This document shows, piece after piece, positions 7,219 through 44,176 of a stretch of DNA of 64,000 bases. Numbering within the stretch: the first letter of the stretch is position 1; every line of letters begins with the position of its first letter. The position numbers were made by a program, and so were the translations under genes. The notes under the pieces were generated by a model, which was not told the origin of the DNA, did not search any database, and saw nothing but the letters and a program-made list of their open reading frames with translations. The stretch is from Hemiscyllium ocellatum (taxonomy: Eukaryota): positions 20,170,341 through 20,234,340 of the forward strand of contig NC_083409.1 in the NCBI RefSeq assembly GCF_020745735.1, given 5' to 3'.

Positions 7219-7257
7219 CACAGTGAGAGCTCCCAGTGCAGAGGCTGTACAAAAACC
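7219..7257 (+). other. 23-bp-spacer RSS of J1
   Basis: CACAGTG (7219-7225) + 23 nt + ACAAAAACC (7249-7257): perfect consensus. Confidence 0.98.
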
Positions 7258-7664
7258 TCAACTCTCTTCATCCCTCTGTCACTCTCACCCTCTCCCTATT
7301 TCCCAGTCTGTCGATCACTCTCACCCTCTTTTTGCCCCTATCAGTCTCTCCCTCATTCATGTGTCTTTCTGTCTCTGCCTCTGGGTTGTGAACTTTATTT
7401 TTTGTTGTTAAATCTTGCAGCTGTTCTTCACATGTGGCCATGGAGTGTAAGGGGGAAACCTGAGGCCTTCAGTGAGCGGTGGACACCACAGAGACTGGAG
7501 TGTGTCGTGGACAGTGACAATCCCAGCATGGGGTAATTTGTTCAGTTTCATTTAGATCTAACTGTGGGATATGACAGTTCAGGCAGTGGGACTGTGTGTC
7601 CATTATTATGCATTTTATATAACCGTGGATGTGTCAGTACAGGAGGTGATTCTGTGTGCTTTGA

Positions 7665-7692
7665 AGTTTTTGTACGGCTCTGTATCACTGTG
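7665..7692 (-). other. 12-bp-spacer RSS of V1
   Basis: Minus strand CACAGTG (7692-7686) + 12 nt + ACAAAAACT (7673-7665). Confidence 0.97.
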
Positions 7693-7989
7693 AAGGCCAG
7701 CTGTAATCCTGCAAACAGTAATAGTCAGCGACATCCTCATTCTGAACGTTGCTGATTGTCAGGGTGAAACTGGTCCCTGATCCACTGCCAGTGAATCGAT
7801 CGGAGACTCCTGTGAATCGAGTTGTTGCATCATAGATCAGGAGAGAGGGTTTCTGACCTTCTCGCTGCTGGTACCAGGAAAGCTCATTGCTAACAGATTG
7901 ACTGGCCGTACAGGTGAGTGTTGCGGTCTGGCCCAGTCCCACTGACAGCACCGGGGGAGACTGAGTCATGATGATGTCCCCACTGATAA
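7693..7989 (-). CDS. IGKV: Ig kappa-type (NS4-like) V exon, unit 1, unrearranged
   Basis: Acceptor CCCTCAG, then (V)[26 protein letters not shown]...[15 protein letters not shown]...[15 protein letters not shown]. Both Cys and the Trp are present, no stops, and it abuts a 12-RSS. Confidence 0.97.
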
Positions 7990-8175
7990 CTGAGGGGTCA
8001 GAGAGAAACGCAGTGAAATCAGAACTGTCACAGAAAGAGCCGGTCAAATGAGAAATTGTTGGAGGCACTGAGCATTCTTCTGGTTTCAGCATTTTCCCTT
8101 CAATCACAAGTCAGTGGAATTGGAGTGAAATGGAGAGCAGCTAAAGATTCAAGGTGGAAGGAGAGAGATTTGTAC

Positions 8176-8224
8176 CTGCGACACAGAATGCCAGGGGCCA
8201 GATCAGCTGGATGTGTGAAATCAT
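8176..8224 (-). CDS. IGKV: leader exon of V1 (MISHIQLIWPLAFCVA)
   Basis: ATG at 8224, 49 nt, phase-1 donor GTACAA, 186-nt intron to the V exon; identical to the unit 2 leader. Confidence 0.95.
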
Positions 8225-8284
8225 GATGTGTGCTCCTGTCCCTGTGCCTGGTTCCTGATAAACTCTCCCTTCACTGGGCTCTGC

Positions 8285-8375
8285 TTTATAAAGCTACAGC
8301 CTGTGAGAGTCTGACTGGGTGTATGTAAATAGCATCGGGCAGAGAGAGCCACGTCAGCCCCTCACACTTCCTCTT
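8285..8375 (-). promoter_or_regulatory. V1 promoter: TATA, octamer variant, PU box
   Basis: TTTATAAA 8285-8292. On minus: ATTTACAT (7/8 to the ATTTGCAT octamer) 8323-8330, TGACGTGG 8349-8356, AAGAGGAAGTG 8365-8375. Confidence 0.75.
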
Positions 8376-8409
8376 CTCTCTCTCTATCTCACTCTCTTTG
8401 TCTCAGAGT

Positions 8410-9360
8410 GATTGATGTGAACAGCACTGAATGAGGCCATTTGGCCCATTGTGTCTGTGCTGGTAAACAAAGATGTGATGACACTAATCCCATCCTCCAG
8501 CTCTTGACCCATGATCCTGGAGGCAACAGCAACACAAGGGAATATCTAAACACTGCTCCAATGTCATGAGAGTTTGTGACTCAACCAGCCTTTCAGGCAG
8601 TGAGTTCCAGACTCCCACCACCCTCTGGGTGAAAACATTTCTCCTCAATTCTTCTCTCACTCTGCAACTCAACTGGGCCTGGATTCACTCAAGTTTATAA
8701 GGATGAGACAGAATCTGATTGAAACATATAAAATTCTAACAGGCCCGGGCAGGGAGGAGGTTCCCCTGGTTGGGGAGTCTGGAACCAGGGGACACAGTCT
8801 CAGGGGGATACGGGGTAGAACATTTAGGACTGAGATGAGGAAACATTTCTTCACTCAGAGGATGGTCAACCTGATGAATTCTCTACCACAAACGGCTGTG
8901 GGGGACAAGGAATTGAATATATTCAAGAAAAAAAGAGAGATAGTTGTTTTGCATTTTAACAGCATGAAGGAAATGGGGAGAAAGCAGAAACACAGCATTG
9001 AGAGAGAGGATCAGCCATGATCGTACTGAATGACACACAAGATTCAAAGGGCTGAATGGCCTACTCCTGCTCCAAGTTTCTATGAGAACATGTCTGTGTT
9101 ACCTTCAATCTCTGTCCCTGGTTATTGAGTCCTTTACTCTTGTATAAAGTGCCTTCCTATGCAACGTATCACTGCCAACAATTATCTTATACCTCTCTAT
9201 CAGGTCCCTCTCAACCTTCAATGCTCCAAGGAAAACAGCCCCAATCTTTCCAATCTTTCCTCATAGCTGACCCTCCATCCCAGGCAGCATCCTGGGAAAT
9301 CTCCTCTGCCCCCTCTTAAGTATAATCACATCCTTCCCAGAATGTTGTGACCAGGACCTT
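8410..9360. mobile_element. cluster of short CR1 3' fragments upstream of V1, shared with about 41960-42935
   Basis: FTQRVVGVWNSLP / FFTQRMVNLMNSLP motifs in opposite orientations. The same nested set occurs inverted upstream of V2. Confidence 0.75.
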
Positions 9361-9695
9361 TCTCTCCCTCTCTCTCTTTTCCCCTTTCTGTCTCACATCT
9401 GCTACTTTGATCTCTCTACATCTATCTCTCTCTCCCACTGTTAATCTATCTCATATTCTCTCTCTCTCACTCTGTCTCATAGCCACTCTCTCCAACTCAC
9501 TCACGCTTCCTCACTCCGTCTCATAATCTTTCTCCATCTCTCACTGTCTCTGTCACTCGCTCCATCTCTCACTTCAATTGAAAACCTCCAAATGTTATCT
9601 ACCCCTCTCTATTTCTCCCTCTGTCTCTCCCTCCTTCTCCACATCCCACTCGACCTCTACTTCTCTTTCTCTGTCTCACTTCTCTCTCTTTCTCA
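9360..9695. repeat. degenerate (CT)n pyrimidine tract
   Basis: Low-complexity CT-rich run; paralogous GA-rich run at 41375-41950. Confidence 0.85.
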
Positions 9696-10034
9696 CAGTG
9701 TCCCAGGTGGAGACAGTTGAATTCAGGATAAATCTCTCTCTGCTCTGCCCCACTAATGGATGTTAACCCTTGACCCCAGAAGCATGTCTTCTCCTGGAGT
9801 AAAGGCCCATTTCCACATCGACCAGGTTTTGGTATCTCTTAGAAAGATGGACAGATTCTTGGTAAATGAAGGGCAGTTTTGTGCTGTTGGCCTATTCTCA
9901 CTGGGGATTGGTTTGGACACAAACCTCATTCCATGAAGGCCCAGCAGAGAGAGGAGATCCTCAGGCCGTCAGTGTGAGCTGGAGGGACAGGACAGGCTCT
10001 GACCCACTGACACATCCTATCCTTGCACAACATG

Positions 10035-10816
10035 GAGGAGAAAGTGAGGACTGCAGATGCTGGAGATCAGAGTTGAAAATGTGTTGCTGGAAAAGTGCAG
10101 CAGGTCAGGCAGCATCTAAAGAGCAGGAGAACCAATGTTTCGGGCATGAGCCCTTCTTCAGGAATGAGGAAACTGTGTCCAGCAGGCTAAGATAAAAGGT
10201 AGGGAGGAGGGACTTGGGGGAGGGGCTTTGGAAATGCGATAGGTGGAAGGAGGTCAAGGTGAGGGTGATAGGCCGGAGTGGGGGTGGGGGCGGAGAGGTC
10301 TGGAAGAAGATTGCAGGTTAGGAAGGCGGTGCTGAGTTCGAGGGATTTAACTGAGACAAGTGGGGGGAGGGGAAATGAGGAAACTGGAGAAATCTAGATT
10401 CATCCCTTGTGGTTGGAGGGTTCCTAGGCGGAAGATGAGGCGCTCTTCCTCCAGCCATCGTGTTGCTATGGTCTGGCGATGGAGGAGTCCAAGGACCTGC
10501 ATGTCCTTGGCAGATTGGGAGGGGGAGTTGAAGTGTCGAGCCACGGGGTGGTTGGGTTGGTTGGTCAACCATCCCATGGCTCAACAGACCATAGCAACAC
10601 GACGCCTCATCTTCCGCCTAGGAACCCTCCAACCACAAGGGATGAACCCAGATTTATCCAGTTTCCTAATTTCCCCTCCCACCACCTTGTCTCAGTCAAA
10701 TCCCTCAAACTCAGCACCGCCTTCCTAATCTGCAATCTTCTTCCTGACCTTTCTGTCCTCACCCCACTCCGGCCTATCACCCTCACCATGACCTCCTTCC
10801 ACCTATCGCATTTCCA
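10035..10816 (-). mobile_element. Penelope-like element 3' end with an inverted partial copy (hairpin)
   Basis: Minus ORF 10347-10577 (NHPVARHFNSPSQ..RWLEEERLIFRLGTLQPQGMN) is a GIY-YIG C-terminus. 10566-10816 repeats part of it on plus. Degenerate hammerhead core at about 10130-10165 on minus. Confidence 0.85.
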
Positions 10817-10821
10817 GTGCC

Positions 10822-11085
10822 AACAGTAAACATGGACGTCAGTTCACGAGAGTGCTCCATGGAGAAACATGGGCCTCCTTCCCACTGAAGCTCCCAATAG
10901 AGACCAGTAAACATGGACATCATTCCTGCTTGAGCCTCCAATAAAGACCAGGAAATGTTGGCCTCCTTCCTAATGGACTCTCCAAAGGAGACCAGTAAAC
11001 ATGGACCACCTTCTGACTGGATACTCCAAGAATACCAGTAAATGTGGGCCTCCTATTCACTTGTCGTTCTAATAGAGACAAGTGG
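10822..11085. repeat. degenerate ~44-bp tandem array (resumes at 12328-12395 after a CR1 insertion)
   Basis: Units with core ACCAGTAAACATGG start at 10822, about 10865 (truncated), 10903, 10947, 10991, 11034 and 11078 (spacings 44,44,43,44). Confidence 0.8.
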
Positions 11086-12325
11086 ATAGTTGAGTTTTTG
11101 AAGAAATAGATAAAAATAGATCAGTACACATTGTCGACATGGACTTTAGCAAGGCCTTAGACAAGATTTCCTATGGTAAACTGCTTAGTAAGATTATATC
11201 ACAGAGGATCTAGGGAGAGCTAACCAATTGGATATAAAATGGGCCTGAAGGTAGGAGGCAGAGGTTGGTGAGAGAGGGTTGTTCTTCAGACTGGAGGCCA
11301 CTGACCAGCCGTCTGCCACAAGAATCGATCCTGGATCCACTGTTGTTCATCATTTACATGAACAATTTGGATGAGAAAATAGCAGGAATGGTCAGTAAGT
11401 TTGTGGCTGACATTAAAATTGTTGGCATCATGGACAGGGAAGATGGTTATCTAAGAGTGCAATGTCATCTTCATCAACTGGGCCAGTGGGTCAACAAATC
11501 CAGATGGAGTTTAATTTCGATAAATGCAAGGAGTTGCATTTTGGTAAGACCAACCAGGGCAGGAATTACACAACTAATGGTAGAGCCATGGGGAGTGTTG
11601 TTGAACAGAGACACTGAGGGGTACAGGTGCATAGTTCCTTGGAAGTGGTGTCACAGGGAGACATGGTGGTGAAGAAGGTATTTGGCTCGTGGACCTTCAA
11701 TGGTCAAAGCAGGAAGTACAGGAGCTGGGACATCATGTTACAGCTGTACAAGGCATTGGTAAGGCCACATTTGGACACTGTGTACATTCCTGCTCACCCT
11801 GCTGTAGGAAGGAAGTTACTGCACTGGTTTGGATAAAAGAAAGATTAACAGGGATGTTACCAAGGTTGGTGAGTTTGAATTACAAGGTGAGGATGGATAA
11901 GCCGAGAGATTTTTCCTGTGAATGCAGGAGATTGAGGGGTGACCTTAGAGGGGTTTATAGAATCATTAGGGCCATAGATAAGGAGAATAGCCAAAGTTTT
12001 TTTTTCCCCAGAGTAGGAGAGTCCAGTACGAGAAGGAATATGTTTAAGTTGAGAGGGGAAAGAATTAGAAGGGACCTGAGAGGCAACCTTTTCACACAGA
12101 GGTTGGTGTGTATGTGTAATAAGCTGCCACAGGAAGTGGTGGAGGGGAGTACAATTACTAAATTTCAAGGACATTTTTACAGGAACATGGATAGGAAGGA
12201 TTTAGAGGGGATTGGGCCAAATGCATGCGGATGGGACTAGTTCAGTTTTGGAAACTTGGTCGGCATGGATGAGTTGAGCAGAAGGGCCTGCTGCCACGCT
12301 GTAAACCTCTATGGCTCTATGATGA
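11086..12325 (+). mobile_element. CR1-type LINE, 5'-truncated
   Basis: ORFs 11265-11672 (PQESILDPLLFIIYMNNLD..KFVADIKI) and 11689-12240; tail CTCTATGGCTCTATG. Confidence 0.85.
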
Positions 12326-13254
12326 TGTAAACATGGGGCACCTTCCCATAGGACCAACAAACAGTAAACATGGGCCTCCTTCCTGAGCTGCAAACCCCAC
12401 ATCCTGTCCATCACATAGGTCCCTTATTTCAATCTGCACAACATTGTTTGTCTCTGCACTACCTCAGCCTCTTGACCACCAAAACCCCAATTCCTGCTCA
12501 TCCCACCTCCTGACTCTATGATTTCAATGTCTTCTCCCAGCTTCCTGAAGCCACATTCCATCAACCCCAACTTGTCTGATATGGAGTGGTCCCTTCCCTG
12601 TCTCACAACTACAGTTGTTCCAGAATCTGACCTCACTGCCAGCCAATTGCCTCCATGGCCTCCCTCCTCCCTCACTCTGTGTCCTGCTGTAGACTCACAT
12701 TCCCTCCCTCCCCCTTCCATCTTCTGTCTCTGGTCTCCTGCCCATTACTGCTTCCTCCATCCCACCATTGACAGCAGAGCCTTCAGACCCCGAGAGTATC
12801 CTCTCTGCCTTCTTCATCCCTCCCTCTCTCGTTGTTTGTGCTATTGAATATACTGTTTAGTTCCATCACTTTTGGTTCGCTGTTCCCTTGCCATTGATTT
12901 GCTGATTTATTCTAGTAAATCTAGTCTGGTGTGTTCTCTGAGTTGGTTCAAGAGTGTTTTGCTTGAGAAAACACTTCCGTGAACTGGTTTGTCTGTTTCT
13001 CCCAGTCTTTGTGTAAAGGTGAGACTAAGTGTGGAAAAGCTGTCATTTCATGGAGCAATCCAGTCAGTCCCACCCCCTCCCCTACTCGACCCCCAGAGCC
13101 TTGTAGGTTTATTTCCATCAAGAGCCCATCCAATCTGCCATTGCAATCACTGAGTGTCTTCACCTGCCTCACCTGAATGGGCACTAATTTCCAAGTCATT
13201 ACGAATTGCTGCTAAAAGAAGTTCTTCCTGACATCCCATATCTCTTGCCCAACA

Positions 13255-13785
13255 AAATGCAAGGTAATCTCAATGTGAAGATGGGATTTTGTCTGCACAC
13301 GGACTGTGCAGTTGTCACCCTTACTGATACTGTCATGGACAGATACACCAGCAGCAGGCAGGTTGGTGAGGGTGATAGTGAGTATGTTTTTCCCTCTTGT
13401 TGGTTCCCTCACCACCTGCCCCAGGTCCAGTCGAGCAGCTGAATCAGGTGGAACCTGACCAGCTTGCTCAGTAGTGATGCTTCTGAGCAGCTCTTGATGG
13501 TGGACTTTGAAGTCCCTTACTCAGGGTATATCCTGCATCATTCCCTCCTTCAGTGCTCCCTCCAAGTGTTGTTCAACATGGAGGAGGACTGACTGCTCAG
13601 TTGAGGTTGGAGGGGAGGGCGGTGCTATGTGGTAATCAGCAGGAGGTTTCCTTCCCCATGTTTGACCTGTTGTCATGAGGCTTCATGGATTCCATAGTTA
13701 ATGGTGAGGACTCCCAGGGCAACTCCCTTCCGACTGTACACACCACTGTGTTGCCTCCCCTGCTTGGTCTATCCTGCCAGTTAAA
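13255..13785 (-). mobile_element. APE-endonuclease region of a non-CR1 LINE (clade unresolved)
   Basis: ORF 13212-13415 REPTRGKNIL..LTNLP..SVHDSISKGD. Same family as 39050-40340, same orientation, so an independent insertion. Confidence 0.6.
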
Positions 13786-13980
13786 AACTGAATGAGGGAA
13801 CAATTCCATTCAGGTTTTACAGCTTGGAGACAGAGCTGCTGCTGGATTCTGTTTCTGATCTCCGAGTGCAGGCGTATGTGTTTGTGAGAGAGTGACTGTC
13901 CTCTTTCCCATCACTGTGCTGTTTCTGAAAAGAAAAATCCCAGAACCAGCCTCCTGTGCTGTCAGGTTCTCGGGAGTGCA

Positions 13981-14220
13981 GACAGTTCACAGTTTTCTCC
14001 CGTCTCAGTAACAAACATCCAGCTGCTCCGAGCTCTTTATTTCACTTCCTCTTTTGGTGAAGTTTCAACCTTGCGATCTGACAGTCTTTGCAGTTATTTT
14101 TTACACTGGGGCTTTCTGCTGTGGTCAGAATCTCTAATAATAAGTGTCCAATCAGTGACAATCACAGCAACTAAGAGCAGTCAGGACTGAGGAGCCAGGC
14201 TCACTGGGAAACACATTGGG
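13981..14220. promoter_or_regulatory. conserved non-coding element, candidate B-cell enhancer (copy 1)
   Basis: 231/240 identical, no indels, to the reverse complement of 37753-37992. Contains an EICE (GGAAGTGAAA on minus, 14040-14049), CAGCTG 14020, TGTGGT 14120 and CCAAT 14148. Confidence 0.6.
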
Positions 14221-14879
14221 AAGATCAAAGCCATTCCTCTTCAGCTCCCAGTACAAACTCTATCCCTCTCCCTGAGCACTGCCTGCTGCTCAACCAGACT
14301 CTTTACAAACTTGGCCTCATCTTTGGGGCTGATCTGAGCACCATATCCTCCATCTCACAAAGATCAGCAACTGAAAATCTCTGTCATGTGCATGGGACTC
14401 CAAACATGACCATACCAATGTTGTGCTTGCACACATCACAGCCACTGCCCTCCGTAACCTTCAGCTCATCCCAATTTCTGCTGCCCCATATCTAAACTCG
14501 TATCAAATCCCATTCCTCCAACCCCCTGCGCCCTGTGCCTACATTGGCTCCTGGTCCAGCAACACCTTGATTTTCAAATTCTCATCCTTGTTCTCAAGTC
14601 CTTCCCTGTCCTCCACTCTCCCTATCTCTGTAACCTCCTCCAAACTGCCTCACTCAGTGTGATCAACAATCTTGGATATATGGCTGTCTATTCCTTCATC
14701 CAAGTCATTTAGAAATATCGTGAAATGCTGAGGTTCTAGCCCAATTCCCTGGCGACACCACTATCCACATTTTGCTCATTGGAGAGCACACACATTATCC
14801 CTCCTCTCTGTCTCCTACCTCCAAACTAATTTCTGACCAAAGATAAATACTTTTCTCTAACTGGCGAGAATGGGAGAAA

Positions 14880-15905: not shown

Positions 15906-15939
15906 TCCATATGTTTCCATGTTTATGAACAGTCTCTCA

Positions 15940-19880: not shown

Positions 19881-22366
19881 AAAAACAAGCTCCTTCCAAA
19901 TTTTGCTGCAGTTGGCCTTCCCCCAGTTTAGCCGTCTACCTTTCAGACCACTCTTGTCTTTGTCCATGAGCATTCTAAAACTTATGGAATTATGGTCACT
20001 GTTACCAAAATAATCCCCTACTGAAATTTCAACCACCTGGCCGGGCTCATTCCCCAAAACCAGGTCCAGTATGGCCCCTTCCTGAGTTAGACTATTTCCA
20101 TATTACTCTGTAAAATCCTCCAGGATGCTCCTTACAAATTCTGCTCCATCTTAACTTCTAACATTAAGTGAATCCCAGTCAATGTTGGGAAAATTAAACT
20201 CTTCCATCACCACCGAGATGTAACTCCTACATCTTTCCATAATCTGTTTACATATTTGCACCTCTAGCCCAGGTTCACTGTTAGGAGACTTGTATATTAG
20301 CACCAACATCGTTACTGCACCCTTCCTGTTTCTGAGCTCTGCCCATATTGCCCCACTGCTCGAGTCCTCCATAGTGCCCTCTTTCACACACCTGTGGTAT
20401 CCACTCTGACCAGTAATGCAACTCCTCCATCCCTTTACCTGCCTCTCGAACCTATCTGATACATCTGTATCCTGGGATATTTAGTTGCCAATCTTGCCCT
20501 TCCCTCAACCACGTCTCCGTAATAGTAATAACATCATACTCCCAGATACTAATCCAAGCCCTAAATTCCTCTGCCTTACCTACTACACTTCTCACATTAA
20601 AACAAATGTGCCTAAGACCATTTGTTCCTTAGCGTTCATCATCTGCTCCCTACCTACTCTTAACCTTAGTCACGCTGACTTCAATATCTAGTTCCTGACA
20701 GGCTTTAGTTACTCCCTTCTTATTGCCCACTAACCTCCTCATTTGGTTCCCATCCCTCTGCTACACTATTTTGAACCCTCCCCAAGAGCGTGATCAAACA
20801 CATCCCTCAGGACACTGGTTTCAGTCCTGCCCAGGTGTAGACCACTCGATTTGTAATTGTCCCACCTCCCCAGGAACCAGTCCCAATGTCCCAAAAATCT
20901 GAACCCCTCCCTCCTGCACCATCTCTCAAGCCACGCATTCATCCTGCCTATACTTTCATTTCGACTCTGACTAGCACATGGCACTGGGAGCAATCCTGAG
21001 ATTACTACCTCTGAGATCCTACCATAAGACCATAAGACATAGGAGTAGAAGTAAGGCCATTTGGCCCATCGAGTCCACTCCGCCATTCAATCATGGCTGA
21101 TTGGCATTTCAACTCCACTTACCCGCATTCTCCCCGTAGCCCTTAATTCCTCGAGACATCAAGAATCTATCAATCTCTGCCTTGAAGACAATTAGCGTTC
21201 CGGCCTCCACTGCACTCTGCGGCAATGAATTCCACAGGCCCACCACTCTCTGGCTGAAGAAATGTCTCCGCATTTCTGTTCTGAATTGACCCCCTCTAAT
21301 TTTAAGGCTGTGTCCACGGGTCCTAGTCTCCTCGCCTAACGGAAACAATTTCCTAGTGTCCACCCTTTCCAAGCCATGTATTATCTTGTATGTCTCTATT
21401 AAGTCTCCCCTTAATCTTCTAAACTCCAATGAATACAATCCCAGTATCCTCAGCCGTTCCTCATATGTTAGACCTACCATTCCAGGGATCATCCGTGTGA
21501 ATCTCTGCTGGACACGTTCCAGTGCCAGTATGTCCTTCCTGAGGTGTGGAGACAAAAACTGGACACAGTCCTCCAAATGGGCCTAACCAGTAGCACAACG
21601 GTGCTTTTATATTCCAACCCTCTTGAGATAAGTGACAACATTGCATTCGCTTTCTTAATCACGGACTCAACCTGCATATTTACCTTTAGAGAATCCTCGA
21701 CTAGCACTCCCAGATCCCTTTGTACTTTGGCTTTACAAATTTTCTCACCGTTTAGAAAGTAGTCTATGCTTTTATTTTTTTTGCCAAAGTGCAAGACCTC
21801 GCATTTGCTCACATTGAATTCCATCAGCCATTTCCTGGACCACTCTCCCAAACTGTCTAGATCCTTCTGTAGTCTTCCCACTTCCTCAGTACTACCTGCC
21901 TGTCCACCTAACTTCGTATCACCTGTAAACTTCGCTAGAATGCCCCCAGTCCCTTCATCCAGATCATTAATATATAATGCGAACAGCTGTGGCCCCAACA
22001 CTGAACCCTGCGGGACACTGCTCATCATCGGCTGCCATTCTGAAAAAGAACCTTTTATCCCAACTCTCTGCCTTCTGTCAGACAGCCAATCCTCAATCCA
22101 TCCCAGTAGCTCACCTCGAACACCATGGGTCCTCACCTTGCTCAGCAGCCTCCCATGTGGCACCTTAGCAAAGGCCTTTTGGAAGTCTAGATAGACCACA
22201 TCCACTGGGTTTCCCTGGTCTAACCTACTTGTCACCTCTTCAAAGAATTCCAACAGGTTTGTCAGGCATGACTTCCCCTTACTGAACCCATGTTGACTTG
22301 TTCTAATCAGACTCTGCTCTTCTTAGAATTTAGAAACCTCATCCTTAATGATGGATTCTAGAATTT

Positions 22367-23221
22367 ATATTTCCTTCCCCTCCCCTATCAGTGTTCCGCA
22401 AAGACCACTCCCTTCGTGACTCCCTCGTCAGGTCCACACCCCCCCACCAACCCAACCTCCACTCCCGGCACCTTCCCCTGCAACCACAGGAAATGTAAAA
22501 CTTGCGCCAACACCTCCTCTCTTACTTCTCTCCAAGGCCCCAAGGGATCCTTTCATATCCGCCACAAATTCACCTGCACCTCCACACACATCATCTATTG
22601 CATCCGCTGCACCCGATGTGGCCTCCTCTATATTGGGGAGACGGGCCGCCTACTTGCGGAACGCTTCAGGGAACACCTCTGGGATGCCCGGACCAACCAA
22701 CCCAACCACCCCGTGGCTCAACACTTTAACTCTCCCTCCCACTCCACGAAGGACATGCAGGTCCTTGGACTCCTCCATCGGCAGAACATAACAACACAAC
22801 GGTTGGAGGAAGAGCGCCTCATCTTCTGCCTGGGAACCCTCCAACTACAAGGGATGAACTCAGATTTCTCCAGTTTCCTCATTTCCCCTACCCCCACCCT
22901 GTCTCAGTCAATTCCCTCGAACTCAGCACCGCCCTCCTAACCTGCAATCTTCTTCCTGACCTCTCCGCCCCCACCCCACTCCAGCCTATCACCCTCACCT
23001 TGACCTCCTTCCACCTATCACATCTCCATCGCCCCTCCCCCAAGTCCCTCCTCCCTACTTTTTATTTTAGCCTGCCTGGCACACTCTCCTCATTCCTGAT
23101 GAAGGGCTCTGGCCCGAAACGTCGAATTTCCTGTTCTTTGGATGCTGCCTGACCTGCTGTGCTTTAACCAGCAACACACTTTCAGCTCTGATCTCCAGCA
23201 TCTGCAGACCTCACTTTTTAC
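22367..23221 (+). mobile_element. Penelope-like element 3' part with GIY-YIG endonuclease reading frame
   Basis: ORF 22416-22940: CNHRKCKTC Cys linker, IIYCIRC..LYIGETGR..RFREH, HFN. Flanked by TCTAGAATTT (22357-22366) and TCTAAAATTT (23222-23231). Confidence 0.9.
23092..23127 (+). ncRNA. minimal type I hammerhead ribozyme motif
   Basis: ATTC-CTGATGA-A-GGGC-TCTG-GCCC-GAAA-C-GTC-GAAT. Full catalytic core, 4-bp stems I and II, palindromic ACGT in place of helix III, predicted cleavage after C23123. Confidence 0.8.
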
Positions 23222-32400: not shown

Positions 32401-32619
32401 AATCAAGGAGTTGTATGTCAAAGATAAATTATACTCTGTTAAAGATTGCACTAGATGAATGCTGACTCTCTGATTCTGAACACTACCTACAAAGCTGCCT
32501 AACTTTGTGACATTAGCAAACTAGAGTATCTGACTTTCTATGCCATTATTCAATGCATTAATAAATAATGTAAATAATTGAGGTGTGCACAGACATTCCT
32601 ATTGGACACCACTGATCAC

Positions 32620-35200: not shown

Positions 35201-36657
35201 AGCTTTCCTGATATTGTCCAAATAGGACCTTTTGCCGATTTTTGCTGATGTTATTGGTCCCAACACAAACAACAACAACTGGATCATCAACCCCCCCCAA
35301 ATCCCAAGTCTGTTATATTTAAAAGCTGGCTCGAGATGCCCTTACCTTGAAACGAGGCAGGCAACACACCATGTGGGACTCTCAATCCTGCTCACAAAGG
35401 ATGCTATCAGTTCCCCATATTATCAAGACCCCCCTTTTCTTTGTGCTCCCCAAGTCTGAGCGGCCTCCTGGACCATGGTGCAGTGGTTTCCTTCATTCAT
35501 TCATAGGAAATGGACATCTCTGGCCCAGCCAGCAATGACTGCCTGTTGGAGTCATTGAATCATAGAATCCATACAGTGTGAAACAGGCCATTCAGACCAA
35601 TGAGTCCACATCAACATTCTGAAGAGCATCCCACCCAGACTTGTCTCCCTACCTTATCCCTGAAAATCTGAAATCTCCCATGGCTAATGCACCTAACCTA
35701 CACATCCCGACATTTTCCCCAGTTTAGACATTATAATTTCTGCTCTGTCTTTATCTTATTATATAATGACTTTGAAACTTACAGAGTTATGGTCACGATC
35801 ACCAAAATCCTCAAACTACATTTGCCCATTCTCCCGACAATCCTTGTCCTCATTAACACAGGGAGCAAGTACCTCATTCCTGTTGGACAAGGAGCTGAGG
35901 CACCTGTAAGGCTAAATCCAGGCTGCATTGTCCTGTTCACTTTTGGTCACACCCTCCTGTCCCTGACCACTGGCCATAATTTGAAGTATTTAACCTACAA
36001 GGTGTGACTGTCTCCACAAACACAGTGTCCAGGTATTTCCCCACCGCCCCTCCCTGATGTGTCGCAGTGTTTGAAGGTCAGATTCCAGCTCATCAACTCT
36101 GAGCTGGAGTGCCTTGAGCAACCAACACTTGCTGTAGATGTGGTCACTCTGAGCTACAATGGGCTCCACCAGCTTCCCCATCGTACAATTACTACACATT
36201 GCCTGGCCCTGTATGTGGAAATTATTTGAGGAGTTTTTAATTTATATTTTAAAATTTGCTGCTGGTCTTTAGTTTTTAATCAGTAAAATATTTCCGTCCA
36301 GGAGACAGAGAAGGTGCCAGCACAGGAGGAGGCTGTTCAGCCCCTCGTGTCAGTGCCAGCTGTTTACGAGCCTCAATCACAATGAGCATCTCCATTGAAA
36401 GTCTGTTGTCAGGAAGTGATTGAGTCCATTTCTAGAGACAGAATAATGGACAAATATGAACTGGTCCGAGAGAGTCAGCCTGGATTGACAAAGGTTCAGA
36501 CATCTTTAACTAACCGGGCTACACTTTGTTAGGAGCTCACTAATGTGGGATATAAGGGAATGTCGATGGCTATTGTCTATAGTGAATTCCAAAAGACATT
36601 TAAGAATGTTCCACAAAAGAAACATTGATTCAGATCTTACACTCCACGACCATTAGT

Positions 36658-36964
36658 GGGCGGCACGGTGGCACAGTGGTTAGCACTGCTGCCTCACAGC
36701 GCTTGAGACCCGGGTTCAATTCCCGACAGACTGTGTGGAGTTTGCACGTTCTCCCCGTGTCTGCGTGGGTTTCCTCCGGGTACTCTGGTTTCCTCCCACA
36801 GTCACAAAGATGTGCAGGTCAGGTGAATTGGCCATGCTAAATTGTCCATAGTGTTAGGTAAGGGGTAAATGTAGGGGTATGGGTGGGTTGCGCTTCGGCG
36901 GGTCGGTGTGGACTTGTTGGGCCGAAGGGCCTGTTTCCACACTGTAAGTAATCTAATCTAATCT
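36658..36964 (+). mobile_element. HE1-type SINE
   Basis: Near-consensus head, core and (TAATC)n tail. Confidence 0.9.
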
Positions 36965-37083
36965 GATGAAGGAGCAGCGCTTCGAACGCTGATGCTTCCG
37001 AACAAACCTGTTGCATTAGAACCTGGTGTTGTGTGATTTTTAACATTTACACGACAGTCCAACATCGGCATCTCCAAATCATG
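36962..37083 (+). mobile_element. Penelope-derived terminal segment (family B) with degenerate hammerhead core
   Basis: CTGATGAAGGAGCAGCGCTTCGAACGCT; homologous to the arms of the 45060-45261 hairpin. Confidence 0.6.
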
Positions 37084-37752
37084 GAATTGGATTGAATTTG
37101 AGAAATGCATTTACCTTGGGTCAGGAATGGGTCTGTCTAGGAGACAGAGAGGAAGGATAACGTGCGTGTGTTCCAATGAGCCAGATGTGAGTAGTGGTAT
37201 TCCCAGGGATCTGTGCTGGGACCTCAGCTTTTCACGATATTTCTCAATGACTTGGATGAAGAAACAGAGAGCCATATGTCCAAGATTATTGATCACACTG
37301 AGTGAGGCAGCTTGGAGGAGGTCACAGAGATAGGGAGGGTGGAAGAGCAGGGAGCAGATTGAGAACAAAAATGAGAATTTGAAAATCGAGGTGTTGCTGG
37401 ACCAGGAGCTTATGTCAGTCAGTGAGGATTGTGGTGGCTATGGTGGGGTGGGGAGGCATGGGCAGGGGTATGGGGTGGACTTGGTGTGAGTTTGAACACA
37501 GACAGCAGAGTTTGGGATGAGCTGATGTTTACGGAAGTCAGTGGCTGTGATGTGGGCCTGGATAACATTGGAAAGTTCACAAAAACATGGTTGAGATTTT
37601 CAGTGGCTGATAATTGTGATGTGGAGGATTTGGGCCTCAAATCAGCCCCAAAGATGAGGCCAAAGTTGTAAAGAGTCTGGTTGAGCAGCAGACAGTGCTC
37701 AGGGAGAGGGATGGAGTTTGTACCGGGAGCTGAAGAGGATGACTTTGATCTT

Positions 37753-37992
37753 CCCAATGTGTTTCCCAGTGAGTCTGGCTCCTCAGTCCTGACTGCTCTT
37801 AGCTGCTGTGATTGTCACTGATTGGACACTTATTATTAGAGATTCTGACCACAGCAGAAAGCCCCAGTGTAAAAAATAACTGCAAAGGCTGTCAGATCGC
37901 AAGGTTGAAACTTCACCAAAAAAGGAAGTGAAAGAAGGAGCTCGGAGCAGCTGGGCGTTTGTTACTGAGATGGGAGAAAACTGTGAACTGTC
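37753..37992. promoter_or_regulatory. conserved non-coding element, candidate B-cell enhancer (copy 2)
   Basis: Inverted paralogue of 13981-14220. AAAAGGAAGTGAAA (EICE core 37924-37933), CAGCTG 37948, ACCACA 37848, ATTGG 37821. Confidence 0.6.
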
Positions 37993-38540
37993 TGTACTCC
38001 CTGGAATTTGACAGCACAGGAGGAGGCCATTCAGCCCATCAGGCCTTTGAATGACCCAGTTAATCCCACTGCTCCCTTCTCTCTCCCCGTAACCCAGCAA
38101 ATCTTTCCTTTACAGTTCAATCTCCAATTCCCTCTTATAGACCTCATGTCCACAAAGGGAGACTGCCCTGAACCTGGGCTACAAATTGGCATCTCATTCA
38201 TTCATTGGGAGACAAACTGCCTGGGCTGGGAAATGGAGCTCAGGATCTGGAACATTCCCTCTCCCCTCCTGAGGAACACTTCACCGGCTGGGTCAACATT
38301 ATTTACCCTGTCTCTAGTTGCCCTGGAGTAGGTGGTGGGAAGCTGCCATCTTGAATTGTTATCGTCCACAAGCTGTAAGTTGACCCACATTGCCAGCATT
38401 TTAACCCAGCAAGGCTGAGGGATCAGCGACATGTTTCCAAGTCCGGATGCTAAGCTTTTTCGAGGGGAACTTGCAGCTCACAGTGTTCCCATGTATCTGC
38501 TGCTCTTGTTCTAAATGGAAGTGAACGTGGGTTTGGAGGG

Positions 38541-38735
38541 AAACCAAAAGAACTGCAGATGCTGTAAATCCGAGACAAAAATAGAAAGTGCTGGAAAAGC
38601 TCAGCAGGTCTGGCAGCATCTGCGAAGAGAAATCAGAGTTAATATTTCATGCTCAACCCGAAATGTTAACTCTGATTTCTCTCCAAGATGCTGCCTGACC
38701 TGCTGAGCTTTTCCTGCAATTTCTATTTTTGTCCA
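38541..38735. mobile_element. Penelope-derived ~195-bp hairpin with TSD
   Basis: Inverted arms around 38645-38655; flanks TGGGTTTGGAGGG (38528-38540) and TGGGTTTGGAAGG (38736-38748). Confidence 0.7.
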
Positions 38736-39049
38736 TGGGTTTGGAAGGTGCTATCTGAAGATCGGTGATGAATTTCTGCAGTGCATCTTATCGATAATAC
38801 ACACTGCTGCTATGGAGCGTCAGTGACAGTGAGTTTGCGTGTTTTGAGAATGCGATGCCAATCAAGGAGTTTGCTTTGCTCTGGATGGTATCAAGCTTTT
38901 TGAGTGGATAAGAAAGACATAGGATACAATAGACAGAGATAGGAAAGGTTTCAAGGGATAAGTGTGAAATGCAGGCAAATGAGACTCGTTCACTTCAGAT
39001 AACCTGGTCAGCGTGTAGAAGTTTGGCTTAAAGGTTTGTTTCTGTGCTG

Positions 39050-40340
39050 TATGACTCTGTGACACTATCAATCTATGAATGTTGTTGGAGCTGCACCCTT
39101 CCAGGCAAGTGGGGAGTATTTGCTCACACTCCTGACTTGGTTCACAGGCTTTGGGGGGACCAGGAGGTGAGTTACTCGAGGCAGTATTTCTCGCCTCTAA
39201 CGTGTTCTTGTAACCATTGTGTTTCTTTGGTGAATCCAGTTGTGTTTCTGGTCAATGGTACCTCAAGAATGTTGATAGTGGGAGTTCAGTGATGGTAATA
39301 GCATTGATTGTCAAGGGGCGATGTTTAGATTGTCTCTTATTGGTGATGGCGATTGTCTGGCATTTGCATGGCACAATTGGGAAATGGCACTTCTCAGTTG
39401 TCCAAATATTATTGCATTTGCACGTGGACTGCTTCAGTATCTGAGGAGTTGAGAAGAGTGCTGAGCATTGTGCAATCTTTGGCAATCATCCCCATTTACG
39501 AGTTTGCCTTGAGTTGCAATATCTGTTCGGAGTCTGTCCTATTTAGTACGGTGATAGTACCACACAACACAATGGAGGGGATTCTCAATGTGAAGGTCAG
39601 ACTTTGTTTCCACAAGAACTGTGTGATGGTCACTCTTACCAATACTGTCAAGGATAGATGCACCTACAGCCACAAGATTGGTGAGGATGGGGTCAAGCAT
39701 CTTTTTCCATCTTTTTGGTTCCAGCTGCAGAGCCAGTCCCTCAGCTACATCCATGAGGAACCAACCAGCTCGATCAGTAATGCTGCTGCCGAGCCACTCT
39801 CAATGGTGGGCATTGAAACCCCCCCAACCAGAGTACACTCTCTGCTGTCATCACCCTCAGTGCTTCCTCCAAATGTTGTTCAACATCCAGGAGAGACTGA
39901 TTCATCAGCCGAGGGAGCAAGATATCTTGTAATCACCAGGAGGTTTCCTCGCCCATGTTTAACCTGGTGTCATGAAGTCCAGAGCCAACTTTGAAACTTC
40001 CCAGGGTAACTCCCTCCTGACTGTAGACCACTGTGTCATCAGCTCTGCTGGTTCTGCCTTTCTGGTGGGACAGGATACATGCAGGGACAGTGATGGTGGT
40101 GTCTGGGACATTGTCTGTAAGATATGGTTCTGTGAGTATGACTGTTGCATGACTAGTCTGTGAGAGAGCTCTCCTGAATTTGGCACTAGCTCCCAGATGT
40201 CAGTAAGGAGGATGGAGCAGGGTAGACAGGGCTGTTTCTGTCATTGTCTTTTCGGTGTCTAGATCGATGCCTGTGGTCCGTCCGGTCTCATTTCTTTGTT
40301 GAAACATTGTCACAATTGATACAACTGAGAGCCTTGCTCG
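39050..40340 (-). mobile_element. APE-endonuclease region of a non-CR1 LINE (clade unresolved)
   Basis: ORF 39539-39754 LDPILTNL..DSIGKSDHHTVLVETK contains the SDH motif. Confidence 0.6.
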
Positions 40341-41208
40341 GCCATTTCAGAGGGCACTAGAGAGTCAACCACATTGCTAGAGGATAGTGCCATGTACTCC
40401 GGCAGTACATTCCGACCTCCCCCACTTCCCCATTCTGTATATGGAAGGCGGAAGCCTGCCAGCAGGATATTCAACCGCAGGAGCTATCACAGCCCGTGCG
40501 CAATTCTGTCCTCACATTAAATCCACACAAATCTTGAATTCACATAACTCCTTCCATGTCCAAACATTCCACGAATGTTCACAAAGTTGCAGTAAGAGGG
40601 ATGGGGGAGAGGGTGGAGGAACATAAGAACTAGGAGCAGGAGCAGGCAATTCAGCCCCTCGAGCCCACTCCACCATTTAATACAATCATGGCTGATCCCA
40701 TCTCAGACTCAACTCCACTTTCCTGCTCACTCTCCATCATCCTTTAACCCATTACCCATTAAATATCTGTTCATCTCCTCCTTGGTGTGAGACAGGGAAA
40801 TGACCACTCCATTTCAGAAAAGACTGACCATGGAAGGGGAAGGAGAGGGGAAGGGATTGGAACATGTTGTGAATGGACAGGATGAGTCAGTGGTCAGAGC
40901 CTGTCCTGTCCCTCCAACTCACACTGATGACCTGAGGATCTCCTCTCTCTGCTAGGCCTTCATGGAATGAGGTTTGTGTCCAAATCAGTCCCCGGTAAGA
41001 ATAGGCCAACAGCACAGAACTGCACAGAACTGCCCTTTATTTGACCAGAATCTGTCCATCTTCCTGAGAGAAGCCAAAACCTGGTCATCGTGGAAATAGG
41101 GCCTTACTCCAGGAAAAAGACAGGGGTCAAGGGTTAACATCCATTAGTGGGGCAGAGCAGAGGGAGATACATCCTGCATTCAACTGTCACCACCCAGGAC
41201 ACTGTCAG

Positions 41209-41345
41209 NNNNNNNNNNNNNNNNNNNNNNNNNNNNNNNNNNNNNNNNNNNNNNNNNNNNNNNNNNNNNNNNNNNNNNNNNNNNNNNNNNNNNNNNNNNN
41301 NNNNNNNNNNNNNNNNNNNNNNNNNNNNNNNNNNNNNNNNNNNNN
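41209..41345. other. assembly gap (137 N)
   Basis: Run of N at the edge of the GA-rich tract. Confidence 1.
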
Positions 41346-41374
41346 GCATCTGATACGGTGTAAGATATGTAAGG

Positions 41375-41950
41375 GGACCAAGAGAGAGGTAAGAGGGAGG
41401 TAGAAATGGTGAGGCTGAGGGATAGAGAGAGAAACAAGATGTGAGACAGTGTGACTGAGAGGGATGGAGAGAGAGAGAGAGACAAAGAGACACAGAGAGA
41501 GAGAGAAAGAGACAGGATGGGTCTGAGACTAAGCATGAAGAGAGTTGAGAGGGAGGGTAGGGTTGAGTGTGTGAGAGAGAGAGAGAGAGATGAATATGGG
41601 TAGATTTATAATGACGAGAGAGAGAGAGAGTATAAATTGGGAGGTAGAGAGGGAAGGAGAGAGAAAGAGGGAGGAATAGAGAGTGACAGATAACAATTGA
41701 AGGATTTTAATTGAAGTGAGAGAGGGAGCGAGTAACAGAGACAGTGAGAGATGGAGAAACAGATGATAAGATGGAGTGAGAAAGCATCAGTGAGTTGTAG
41801 AGAGTGGCTATGAGACAGAGTGTGTGTGAGAGAGAGAGAGAGAGAGAAAGCGAGAGGGAGAGAACATAAAAGAGATTAACAGTGGGAGAGAGAGAGAGAG
41901 AGGTAGAGAGAAAGTAATGGTAGATGTGAGTCACAGAGAGAGAGGGACAA
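41375..41950. repeat. degenerate (GA)n purine tract
   Basis: Low-complexity GA run; inverted paralogue of 9360-9695. Confidence 0.85.
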
Positions 41951-42983
41951 GTCCTGGTCACCACACTCTGGGAAGAATGTTATTGTACCGGATAGGGTAC
42001 AGGGGAGATTTCCCAGGATGCTGCCTGAATGTGAGCTTTGAGCAGTGAAGGCTTAAAAGGGACCTGATAGAGAGGGATAGGATTATTCAGGACAGTGATA
42101 GGATAGGTAGGATGGCACTTTTTACATGAGTAAAGGACTTAATATCCTGGTACAGAGATTGAAGGTAACACAGACATGGACACGTAGAAACTTGGAGCAG
42201 CAGTAGGCCATTCGGCCCTTTGAGTCTGCTCTGTCATTCAGTATGATCATGGCTGTATCAATTTTTGAATGTCATCATTTTTTCGAGGGTTGGTGTGGTC
42301 TTGTTTCCACACTGTAGGCATTCTATGATCTATGTCTGATCCTCTCTCTCAAAGCCATATTCCTGCCTTCTCCCCATTCTCTTCAAGCTGTTAAAATGCA
42401 AAACAATTATCTCTCTCTTTTTCTTGAATATATTCAGTTTCTTATCCTCCACAGCCTTCAGTGGTAGAGAATTCCACAGGTTGACCACCCTCTGAGTGAA
42501 GAAATGTTTCCTCATCTCAGTCCTAAATGGTCTACACTGTATCCCCCTGAGCCTGTGTCCCCTAGTTCCAGACTCCCCAACCAGAGGAACCCTCCTCCCT
42601 GCCCAGCCCTGTTACAATTTTATATGTTTCAATCAGATCCCCTCTCATCGTTTTGAACACGAGTGAGTCCATGGCCAGGCGAGTTGGAGAGTGAGAGGAG
42701 AGTTGAGAAGAAATGTTTTCACCCAGAGGGTGGTGGGAGTCTGGAACTCACTGCCTGAAAGGCTGGTTGAGTCAGAAACTCTCGTGACATTGGAGCAGTG
42801 TTTAGATATTCCCTTGTGTTGTTGTAACCTACAGGGTAATGGGCCAAGAGCTGGAGGATGGGATCAGTGTCATCAGATCTTTGTTTACCAGCACAGACAC
42901 AATGGGCCAAATGGCCTCATTCAGTGCTGTTCACATCAATGACCATGAGACAAAGAGAGCGAGATAGAGAGAGAGAGAGAGAG

Positions 42984-43082
42984 AAGAGGAAGTGTGAGGG
43001 GCTGAAGTGGCTCTCTCTGCCTGATGCCATTTACATACTGAGGAACACCCAGTCAGACTCTCACAGGCTGCAGCTTTATAAA
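42984..43082 (+). promoter_or_regulatory. V2 promoter: PU box, octamer variant, TATA
   Basis: AAGAGGAAGTG 42984-42994; ATTTACAT 43029-43036; TATAAA 43077-43082, about 60 nt before the ATG. Confidence 0.75.
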
Positions 43083-43142
43083 GCAGAGCCCAGTGAAGGG
43101 AGAGTTTATCAGGAACCAGGCACAGGGACAGGAGCACACATC

Positions 43143-43191
43143 ATGATTTCACACATCCAGCTGATCTGGCCCCTGGCATTCTGTGTCGCAG
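43143..43191 (+). CDS. IGKV: leader exon of V2 (MISHIQLIWPLAFCVA)
   Basis: ATG 43143, 49 nt, donor GTACAA, 186-nt intron ending CCCTCAG at 43377. Confidence 0.95.
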
Positions 43192-43377
43192 GTACAAATC
43201 TCTCTCCTTCCACCTTGAATCTTTAGCTGCTCTCCATTTCACTCCAATTCCACTGACTTGTGATTGAAGGGAAAATGCTGAAACTAGAGGAATGCTCAGT
43301 GTCTCCAACAATCTCTCATTTGACCGGCTCTTTGTGTGACAGTTCTGATTTCACTGTGTTTCTCTCTGACCCCTCAG

Positions 43378-43676
43378 GTATCAGTGGGGACATCATCATG
43401 ACCCAGTCTCCCCCGGTGCCGTCAGTGGGACTGGGCCAGACCGCAACCATCACCTGTACGGCCAGTGAATCTGTTAGCAAGTGGGTTAGCTGGTACCAGC
43501 AGCGAGAAGGTCAGAAACCCTCTCTCCTGATCTATGAAGCAACAAAACGATTCTCAGGAGTCTCCGAGCGATTCACCGGCAGTGGATCAGAGACCAGTTT
43601 CACCCTGACAATCAGCAACGTTCAGAATGAAGATGTTGCTGACTATTACTGTCAGCAGCATAGGAGCTACCCTCGA
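43378..43676 (+). CDS. IGKV: Ig kappa-type (NS4-like) V exon, unit 2, unrearranged
   Basis: (G)[57 protein letters not shown]; open frame, abuts a 12-RSS. Confidence 0.97.
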
Positions 43677-43704
43677 CACAGTGACACAGAGCCATACAAA
43701 AACC
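43677..43704 (+). other. 12-bp-spacer RSS of V2
   Basis: CACAGTG + ACACAGAGCCAT + ACAAAAACC: perfect consensus. Confidence 0.98.
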
Positions 43705-44137
43705 TCAATACATAAAGCACGACCTACTGTACTGACCCATCCCACAGCTACATAAAATGTATAATAATGGACACACTGTCCCACCACCTGAACTGATATA
43801 TCCACAGTTCGATCCAAATGAAACTGATCAAATTACCCCAAACTGGGATTGGCACTGTCCACGACACACTCTAATCCCTGTGGTGTTTCAACGTTCACTG
43901 AAGGCCTCAAGTTTCCCTCTTACACTCCATGGCCACATGTGAAGGGCTGCTGCAAGTTTTAAAATCGAAAAATAAATTTCACAAACCTCCCGAGCCCAGC
44001 TGGAAACAACCCAGAGAGACAGAGAGAGAAAGACACATGAATGAGGGAGAGACAGAGAGAGGCAGGGAGAGGGTGAGAGTGAATGAGAGACAGAGACAGG
44101 GAGAGGTTGCCATTGATAAGAGGGAAGCAGAGAGCAG

Positions 44138-44176
44138 AGTTTTTGTACAGCCTCTGCACTGGGAGCTCTCACTGTG
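44138..44176 (-). other. 23-bp-spacer RSS of J2
   Basis: Plus strand AGTTTTTGT (44138-44146) + 23 nt + CACTGTG (44170-44176); spacer identical to that of J1. Confidence 0.97.

What the first reader, a model, noticed from the sequence alone, without database searches (positions are those of the whole stretch)
7219..44176. Head-to-head geometry permits cross-cluster inversional V-J joining that would be invisible at the junction
Within-unit joining is deletional (474-bp and 500-bp circles). V1-12RSS and J2-23RSS face the same way, as do V2-12RSS and J1-23RSS. So 12/23-compliant inversions of 36,484 bp (7693-44176) or 36,458 bp (7219-43676) would swap which C each V uses, and the other V could still join the other J afterwards. 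J1 and J2 are identical in coding sequence and 23-spacer, so cDNA junctions cannot reveal it. The only pair with two perfect nonamers is the cross pair V2 x J1. Shark Ig clusters are generally held to rearrange internally, whereas inversional use is known in teleost light-chain loci. A real event here would be a small combinatorial system in a shark.
Basis: partly seen in the sequence, partly recalled or inferred. Interest (0 to 1): 0.75.

Follow-up and report, generated by a model that had tools for sequence, protein, structure and literature searches.

The report
Head-to-head shark kappa light-chain miniclusters
Two intact shark antibody kappa light-chain mini-genes lie head to head 36 kb apart in an old inverted duplication, so cross-joining by DNA inversion is geometrically possible, but nothing shows that it happens and it would add no antibody diversity.

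Summary
Cluster 1 (- strand) has J1 ending at 7218, its 23-RSS at 7219-7257, the V1 12-RSS at 7665-7692 and the V1 exon at 7693-7989. Cluster 2 (+ strand) has the V2 exon ending at 43676, its 12-RSS at 43677-43704, the J2 23-RSS at 44138-44176, J2 from 44177 and C2 from 61982. The intervals of 474, 500, 36,484 and 36,458 bp are correct, as are the identical J coding sequence and 23-spacer and the nonamer pattern. In-silico inversions reproduce the claimed products.

The N gap (41209-41345) lies in a CT-rich non-coding tract 2 kb upstream of V2. Its flanks are colinear with the left arm, so the orientation is credible.

The two units are arms of an inverted duplication at least 14.8 kb long and about 88% identical. 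It is neither an assembly artefact nor a pair of alleles.

The geometry permits cross-joining, but J1 and J2 encode the same residues, so no V-domain diversity is gained. The number of joining attempts stays at two. Each J also has its own V 0.5 kb away.

C1 is outside the window. The scan noted the same idea before on another piece of this genome (s1-228448), where a follow-up judged the layout routine.

The parts
7184..7218 (-). J1 exon (kappa J; LTFGKGTKLRL, phase-1 end before donor GTAAGT)
   Evidence: identical to J2
7219..7257 (-). J1 23-RSS: heptamer 7219-7225, 23-bp spacer 7226-7248, consensus nonamer 7249-7257
7258..7664 (-). V1-J1 intervening DNA between the two signals (excised with both RSS as a 474-bp circle, 7219-7692)
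   Evidence: only 75% identical to its counterpart in cluster 2
7665..7692 (-). V1 12-RSS: heptamer 7686-7692, 12-bp spacer, nonamer ACAAAAACT 7665-7673
7693..7989 (-). V1 exon (end of leader plus kappa V domain, open frame, ends CLQDYSWP)
8176..8224 (-). V1 leader exon (ATG 8224-8222, donor GT); octamer-like ATTTACAT and a TATA-like box lie upstream
2..14860 (.). Left arm of the inverted duplication (interrupted by transposon insertions)
37097..51710 (.). Right arm of the inverted duplication; core 42319-45053 is 88% identical to 9032-6343
41209..41345 (.). Assembly gap (N) inside a CT-rich low-complexity tract, 2 kb upstream of the V2 leader; it touches no exon or RSS
   Evidence: flanks align in order and orientation to left-arm positions 9648 and 9692
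43143..43191 (+). V2 leader exon; the promoter/leader block 43068-43270 is about 100% identical to cluster 1
43378..43676 (+). V2 exon (open frame, ends CQQHRSYP)
43677..43704 (+). V2 12-RSS with consensus heptamer and consensus nonamer
44138..44176 (+). J2 23-RSS (nonamer AGTTTTTGT, spacer identical to J1's, heptamer CACTGTG)
44177..44211 (+). J2 exon, identical to J1
61982..62310 (+). C2 exon coding part (kappa C, 108 residues plus stop), 17.8 kb downstream of J2
   Evidence: 95-98% identical to Chiloscyllium punctatum and Hemiscyllium ocellatum kappa C, 91% to nurse shark NS4

Best explanation
This is an old inverted segmental duplication of one cartilaginous-fish kappa (type III/NS4) light-chain minicluster. 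Non-coding divergence between the arms is about 0.11 substitutions per site. Each arm keeps its own conserved promoter, leader, V exon, 12-RSS, 23-RSS, J and upstream conserved block, so each is a self-contained unit. Each unit most likely rearranges as published for shark kappa genes: RAG joins V to the J 0.5 kb downstream and deletes a 474- or 500-bp circle. The head-to-head layout is a by-product of how the duplication arose. It does make V1 x J2 and V2 x J1 legal inversional partners under the 12/23 rule. I infer that such joins are absent or rare by-products, roughly 0.2-1.5% of joins if contact frequency falls as distance to the power -1 to -1.5. They would also be functionally silent, because J1 and J2 encode the same residues and kappa C regions of different clusters differ by only a few residues. 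Shown here: the anatomy, the geometry, continuity across the gap, and the age and extent of the duplication. Inferred: autonomy of the units, rarity of cross-joins, and the existence of an intact C1 outside the window.
For: All four RSS and the exons are intact, and the stated intervals are exact. The arms are colinear over at least 14.8 kb at about 88% identity, each with its own transposon insertions, and part of the right arm lies on the same contig as cluster 1. Identity is about 100% for promoter and leader, 89.6% for the V exon, 74 of 75 bases for J plus 23-RSS, and 75% for the V-J intervening DNA. That pattern fits two separately maintained functional units. V and C are nearest to orectolobiform kappa chains. 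Published work says shark V-J segments are about 500 bp apart and rearrange within the cluster, that 78 of 78 analysed IgH rearrangements were within the minilocus, and that long-distance recombination between loci is 'rare, if it exists'. The window holds no signal-joint footprint and no further V, J or C. The logic of the products was checked by simulation: the V domain is the same and the number of attempts is the same.
Against: Nothing in the sequence forbids cross-joining. The signals are consensus-grade. The 36-kb distance is well inside the 81 kb documented for zebrafish inter-cluster inversions. No CTCF-like motif separates the units. Shark IgH V segments are known to trans-rearrange to TCR delta. 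Published within-cluster evidence comes mostly from loci at least 82-120 kb apart and would not detect a swap between identical J segments. No reads could be examined. C1 was not seen.
Confidence: 0.7

Rival explanations
1. Cross-cluster inversional joining is a frequent event (several percent or more of joins by these V segments). The head-to-head pair then works as one four-segment locus, although the protein repertoire does not change.
For: The signals are 12/23-compatible, oriented the same way and consensus-grade. The distance is shorter than in documented zebrafish inter-cluster inversions. No CTCF-like boundary motif lies between the units. Such events would escape junction-based cDNA studies because the J segments are identical.
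Against: Each J has its own V 0.5 kb away, inside what would be the same recombination centre. The shark literature finds within-cluster joining only. Earlier scan notes, which I did not check, describe head-to-head pairs where a germline RAG join hit one unit and left its partner split, which is a within-cluster event.
Confidence: 0.1
2. The pair is a selected 'small combinatorial' or second-chance system: inversion swaps which C each V uses and allows a further join afterwards.
For: The geometry allows a second, 974-bp deletional join after a first inversion. Comparable arguments have been made for zebrafish and mammalian kappa loci.
Against: J1 and J2 encode the same residues, so no new V domain arises. 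There are two joining attempts by either route, so no extra chance is gained. After a normal deletional join the cluster has no RSS left, so editing is impossible. Kappa C regions of different clusters within one related genome differ by only a few residues. The identity of J and its spacer is family-wide rather than pair-specific.
Confidence: 0.03
3. The head-to-head geometry is an assembly artefact: the sequence right of the N gap is mis-oriented or misplaced, or two alleles were scaffolded as an inverted repeat.
For: An N gap of estimated length lies inside the right arm, between the two V genes.
Against: The left contig alone already holds cluster 1 and about 4 kb of the inverted right arm (37097-41208). 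The sequence on both sides of the gap aligns in order and orientation to a continuous stretch of the left arm (9281-9648 and 9692-10034). The gap sits in a CT-rich tract where assemblies typically break. Divergence of 11-12%, different CDRs and arm-specific transposon insertions exclude alleles or a collapsed repeat.
Confidence: 0.04

Closest known systems
Nurse shark NS4 / horn shark type III (kappa) light-chain miniclusters (Lee et al. 2000, PMC2193156; review PMC5192425)
   Same: One leader-V with a 12-RSS, one J with a 23-RSS about 500 bp downstream, and one C exon. The octamer-like promoter is present. V and C sequences are 84-91% identical to a nurse shark chain.
   Different: Here two such units lie head to head only 36 kb apart as arms of an inverted duplication, whereas published nurse shark Ig clusters are described as spatially distant. 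The J2-C2 intron is 17.8 kb long and carries a LINE insertion.
Zebrafish IgL inter-cluster inversional V-J rearrangement (Zimmerman et al. 2008, PMC3014032)
   Same: Multiple V-J-C clusters lie on one chromosome with V and J signals oriented the same way. Joining therefore inverts the DNA in between and attaches a V to another cluster's J-C. The distance is comparable (up to 81 kb there, 36 kb here).
   Different: In zebrafish the events were demonstrated with cDNA clones fitted to germline V and C. Many of those V segments have no deletional partner nearby, and the J and C segments differ. Here nothing is demonstrated, each V has its own J 0.5 kb away, and the two J segments are identical.
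Mammalian Ig kappa inversional V-J joining and receptor editing (discussed in PMC3014032; PMC2191736)
   Same: Kappa-type signals (V 12-RSS, J 23-RSS) are used, and inversion retains the intervening segments for a later join.
   Different: Mammals have many V and several J segments before one C, so secondary joins can replace a first one. Here each unit has one V and one J, so a first deletional join leaves nothing to edit with.
Known departures from cluster autonomy in sharks: IgH V to TCR delta trans-rearrangement, and switching between IgH clusters (PMC12227049; PMC5192425)
   Same: They show that shark V segments, or whole VDJ units, can become attached to constant regions outside their own cluster.
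   Different: They involve heavy-chain or TCR loci, and switching is a non-RAG mechanism. None involves light-chain clusters or an inversion between paired clusters.

Membership tests
Cartilaginous-fish kappa (type III/NS4) light-chain minicluster | Leader plus V exon with kappa-type sequence and an open frame | tested here: met
   Both V genes have an ATG leader, a GT/AG intron and an open V exon. The best protein matches are shark kappa light chains at 79-84% identity.
Cartilaginous-fish kappa (type III/NS4) light-chain minicluster | V 12-RSS and J 23-RSS in deletional orientation about 0.5 kb apart | tested here: met
   Intervals are 474 and 500 bp, with consensus heptamers and 12- and 23-bp spacers. 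Nurse shark has about 500 bp.
Cartilaginous-fish kappa (type III/NS4) light-chain minicluster | A single kappa C exon downstream of J | tested here: inconclusive
   Met for cluster 2: the C2 exon at 61982-62310 is 95-98% identical to Chiloscyllium and Hemiscyllium kappa C. Cluster 1's C is outside the window. Its presence is only inferred from the conservation of J1 and its RSS.
Inter-cluster inversional V-J rearrangement (zebrafish IgL type) | V and J signals of different clusters are 12/23-compatible and point the same way on one chromosome | tested here: met
   products simulated; continuity across the gap supported.
Inter-cluster inversional V-J rearrangement (zebrafish IgL type) | Transcripts or DNA in which a V of one cluster is joined to the J-C of another | not testable with these tools
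No protein of this genome was among the database hits.
Inter-cluster inversional V-J rearrangement (zebrafish IgL type) | Chromosomally retained signal joint | tested here: not met
   The germline window has no heptamer-to-heptamer junction, even with two mismatches allowed. This speaks only to the germline, not to lymphocytes.
Mammalian-type kappa editing locus | Spare V and J signals remain after a first join, so a secondary join can replace it | tested here: not met
   The window has only two V, two J and four strong RSS. A deletional join removes both signals of its unit.

The most novel reading that the evidence does not exclude
In lymphocytes of this shark, V1 x J2 and V2 x J1 inversional joins really occur at a measurable rate (0.1% of joins or more). 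That would be the first RAG-mediated inter-cluster rearrangement of light-chain genes shown in a cartilaginous fish, and would show that the 'autonomous minigene' rule depends on distance and orientation rather than being absolute.
Probability: 0.3. Interest if true: 0.55.

Novelty: new member of a known kind. Interest (0 to 1): 0.3.

Why it matters
Shark antibody genes are the textbook case of self-contained V-J-C minigenes that rearrange only within themselves. The usual explanation is that clusters lie far apart and all point the same way. This locus, and by earlier scan notes several others in the same genome, breaks both assumptions: two intact kappa units lie 36 kb apart in opposite orientation. 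The within-cluster rule therefore becomes directly testable with one PCR. A positive result would show that the rule is kinetic rather than absolute. A negative result would show that something beyond distance and orientation confines RAG to a cluster. Either way the antibody repertoire would not change, because the two J segments are identical. This limits the biological weight of the finding.

Tried and rejected

(2) Layout of kappa genes in a related chromosome-level genome: the look-up of encoding contigs returned no DNA or coordinates for the Chiloscyllium punctatum record because the file was too large. It showed only a 9.2-kb gene with no called neighbour within 10 kb.

(3) CTCF-like boundary motifs between the clusters: one match in 64 kb, outside the interval, against 0.9 expected by chance. 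This is uninformative.

(4) Germline footprints of a past cross-join: no signal-joint-like junction and no extra V, J or C in the window.

(5) The nurse shark kappa-cluster paper of Iacoangeli et al. 2015 is not held in the library and no held paper led to it. Its abstract is cited from memory only.

(6) Assembly-artefact and allele explanations were rejected on divergence and on colinearity across the gap.

(7) The 'perfect nonamer pair' as a sign of preferred cross-joining was rejected. The two imperfect nonamers differ from consensus only at position 9.
Full report
WHAT IS THERE. The window holds exactly two kappa-type V exons, two J segments and one C exon (tblastn and pattern search).

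Cluster 2 is on the + strand:
- leader exon 43143-43191 and V exon 43378-43676;
- V 12-RSS at 43677-43704 (CACAGTG, 12 bp, ACAAAAACC);
- J 23-RSS at 44138-44176 (AGTTTTTGT, 23 bp, CACTGTG);
- J exon 44177-44211 followed by GTAAGT;
- C exon from 61982, after a 17.8-kb intron.

Cluster 1 is on the - strand:
- leader 8224-8176 and V exon 7989-7693;
- V 12-RSS at 7692-7665 (nonamer ACAAAAACT);
- J 23-RSS at 7257-7219 (consensus nonamer);
- J exon 7218-7184.

Both V genes have an ATG leader, GT/AG splice sites, an octamer-like ATTTACAT, a TATA-like box and open frames. A scan for heptamer-spacer-nonamer sites finds these four strong RSS, two weak look-alikes (13912, 39061) and nothing else. Shuffled sequence gives 0.17 sites.

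The within-unit intervals (474 and 500 bp), the cross intervals (36,484 and 36,458 bp), the identity of J coding sequence and 23-spacer, and the statement that only V2 x J1 pairs two consensus nonamers are all exact. I carried out both inversions in silico:
- Inverting 7693-44176 places the V1 coding end against J2 and fuses the two heptamers at 7692.
- Inverting 7219-43676 does the same for V2 and J1.
- In both cases the remaining V and J end up in deletional configuration, 974 bp apart.
The geometry claim is therefore correct.

THE ASSEMBLY GAP. The N run at 41209-41345 lies between the two V genes, so the head-to-head orientation could in principle depend on a scaffolding decision. Three observations argue that the join is right.
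- The contig left of the gap already contains cluster 1 and about 4 kb of the inverted right arm (37097-41208). The inverted duplication therefore exists without the join.
- A continuous stretch of the left arm aligns, inverted, to both sides of the gap in the expected order: 9281-9648 to 42027-41638, and 9692-10034 to 41208-40863.
- The gap sits in a CT-rich low-complexity tract that is also present, in shorter form, at the matching place in the left arm.
The gap is 2 kb upstream of the V2 leader and touches no exon or signal. I did not try to fill it. Its length is only an estimate, so the two 36-kb figures carry that uncertainty.

WHAT KIND OF LOCUS. Self-comparison shows an inverted duplication with arms of at least 14.8 kb (2-14860 against 51710-37097). 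Arm-specific transposon insertions interrupt the arms, and a 22-kb transposon-rich centre separates them. Identity over the core is 88%, and the Kimura distance in non-coding flanks is 0.11. That is far too diverged for alleles or a collapsed repeat.

Conservation is uneven in the way expected for two working genes:
- promoter and leader, about 100% over 200 bp;
- J plus 23-RSS, 74 of 75 bases (chance about 8 in 10,000 at the 88% background, my calculation);
- V exon, 89.6%, with differences concentrated towards CDR3;
- V-J intervening DNA, only 75%.

V2 is 79-84% identical to kappa chains of Chiloscyllium punctatum, Hemiscyllium ocellatum, nurse shark and others. C2 is 95-98% identical to the two hemiscylliid species and 91% to a nurse shark chain of the NS4 type. 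The genes are therefore orectolobiform kappa (type III/NS4) miniclusters, whose V-J distance of about 500 bp is published.

C1 is not in the window. By colinearity it should lie roughly 5-10 kb before the window start. The strong conservation of J1 and its signal suggests it is intact. Both statements are inference.

DOES THE GEOMETRY MEAN ANYTHING?
- In nurse shark IgH, 78 analysed rearrangements were all within the minilocus, and long-distance recombination is 'rare, if it exists'.
- Zebrafish is the documented case of inter-cluster inversional light-chain joining, over up to 81 kb.
- Sharks are also known to trans-rearrange IgH V segments to TCR delta.
So nothing forbids a cross-join here, and no CTCF-like motif separates the units (a weak, uninformative null).

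Three points of logic reduce its significance.
- J1 and J2 are identical, so a cross-join yields the same V domain as a within-cluster join. Only the C changes, and kappa C regions of different clusters within one related genome differ by a few residues only.
- The pair gets two joining attempts by either route (V1J1 then V2J2, or V1J2 then V2J1), so there is no extra chance. After an ordinary deletional join, that unit has no signal left, so the pair cannot edit a receptor as mammalian kappa loci do.
- Each J has its own V 0.5 kb away, near the optimum for DNA looping. With contact frequency falling as distance to the power -1 to -1.5, a partner 36 kb away would be used in roughly 0.2-1.5% of joins. 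This is my rough estimate, not a measurement.

- The 'two perfect nonamers' argument rests on nonamer position 9, which is among the least constrained positions according to classical RSS mutagenesis (my own knowledge).
- The identity of J and its spacer is not special to this pair. A Chiloscyllium punctatum gene model that reads through its J signal gives the same peptide string as the window's reading of the J2 signal.

The 'invisibility' also needs qualifying. It holds for spliced cDNA junctions. The J1 and J2 introns differ from intron base 14 onwards (A at 7170, C at 44225, and 15 further differing positions, four of them a 4-base indel, within 90 bases). The last 25 bases of V1 and V2 differ at 10 or more positions. 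A single read of about 100 bases from genomic DNA or unspliced RNA would therefore reveal a cross-join.

A look-up of a related species' chromosome returned no DNA. The nurse shark kappa-cluster study that states, as I recall its abstract, that functional kappa clusters are at least 100 kb apart and that each rearrangement is local to its minigene (Iacoangeli et al. 2015) is not in the held library.

EARLIER NOTES OF THIS SCAN (leads, not evidence).
- The same idea was raised for another head-to-head kappa pair on another piece of this genome (s1-228448). Its follow-up judged the layout routine in an array of about 200 copies, with each unit joining within itself.
- Other notes list further head-to-head pairs (s1-236454, s1-198116, s1-223295).
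- In two of these pairs, one unit is germline-joined while its partner is still split. If correct, these are natural experiments in which RAG acted within one cluster of a head-to-head pair.
- Notes of germline signal joints elsewhere in the genome (s1-195743, s1-233851) suggest that inversional RAG events do leave visible footprints in this genome. None is present here.
I could not check any of these notes.

VERDICT. The locus is a further example of shark kappa miniclusters, arranged as an old inverted duplication. The cross-cluster inversional pathway is mechanically legal, undemonstrated, probably rare and functionally silent. Its value is as a clean and cheap test of the 'clusters rearrange only internally' rule.

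Noticed in passing
window 53736-59036 (- strand): A nearly full-length L1-like LINE lies inside the J2-C2 intron. It has a coiled-coil ORF1 (58167-59036), an endonuclease ORF (56009-57547) and a reverse-transcriptase ORF (53736-56075), the last two overlapping in different frames. It accounts for about 5 kb of the 17.8-kb intron.
   Followed up: partly
window 13950-14483 and 37503-38023: A block 5-6 kb upstream of each V is kept at 88.6% identity between the arms, while the DNA nearer each V (10034-13950 on the left, 38023-40863 on the right) does not align between the arms.
   Followed up: no
window 44415-44660 and 6985-6740: Highly conserved blocks (96-100% against an 88% background) lie in the J-C intron 240-480 bp downstream of J, next to a CAG/CTG triplet run. 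They include an isolated CACAGTG heptamer with no nonamer. This may be an intronic control element. The heptamer alone is within chance expectation.
   Followed up: no
window 61982-61984 with J at 44211: The J-C junction codon of cluster 2 is ACC (Thr). Related species' kappa chains have Ser at this place (LRLSRDNSQ). This could serve as a cluster-specific marker only 36 bases from the V-J junction.
   Followed up: partly
window 41346-41700 and 9560-9690: A CT-rich low-complexity tract upstream of both V genes is much expanded in the right arm, and the assembly breaks there.
   Followed up: yes
window 22416-22937 (+), 21489-22253 (-), 24694-25209 (-): The 22-kb centre between the arms is a patchwork of retroelement fragments (reverse transcriptase, and a GIY-YIG domain of Penelope type). 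No cellular gene and no Ig segment was detected there.
   Followed up: partly
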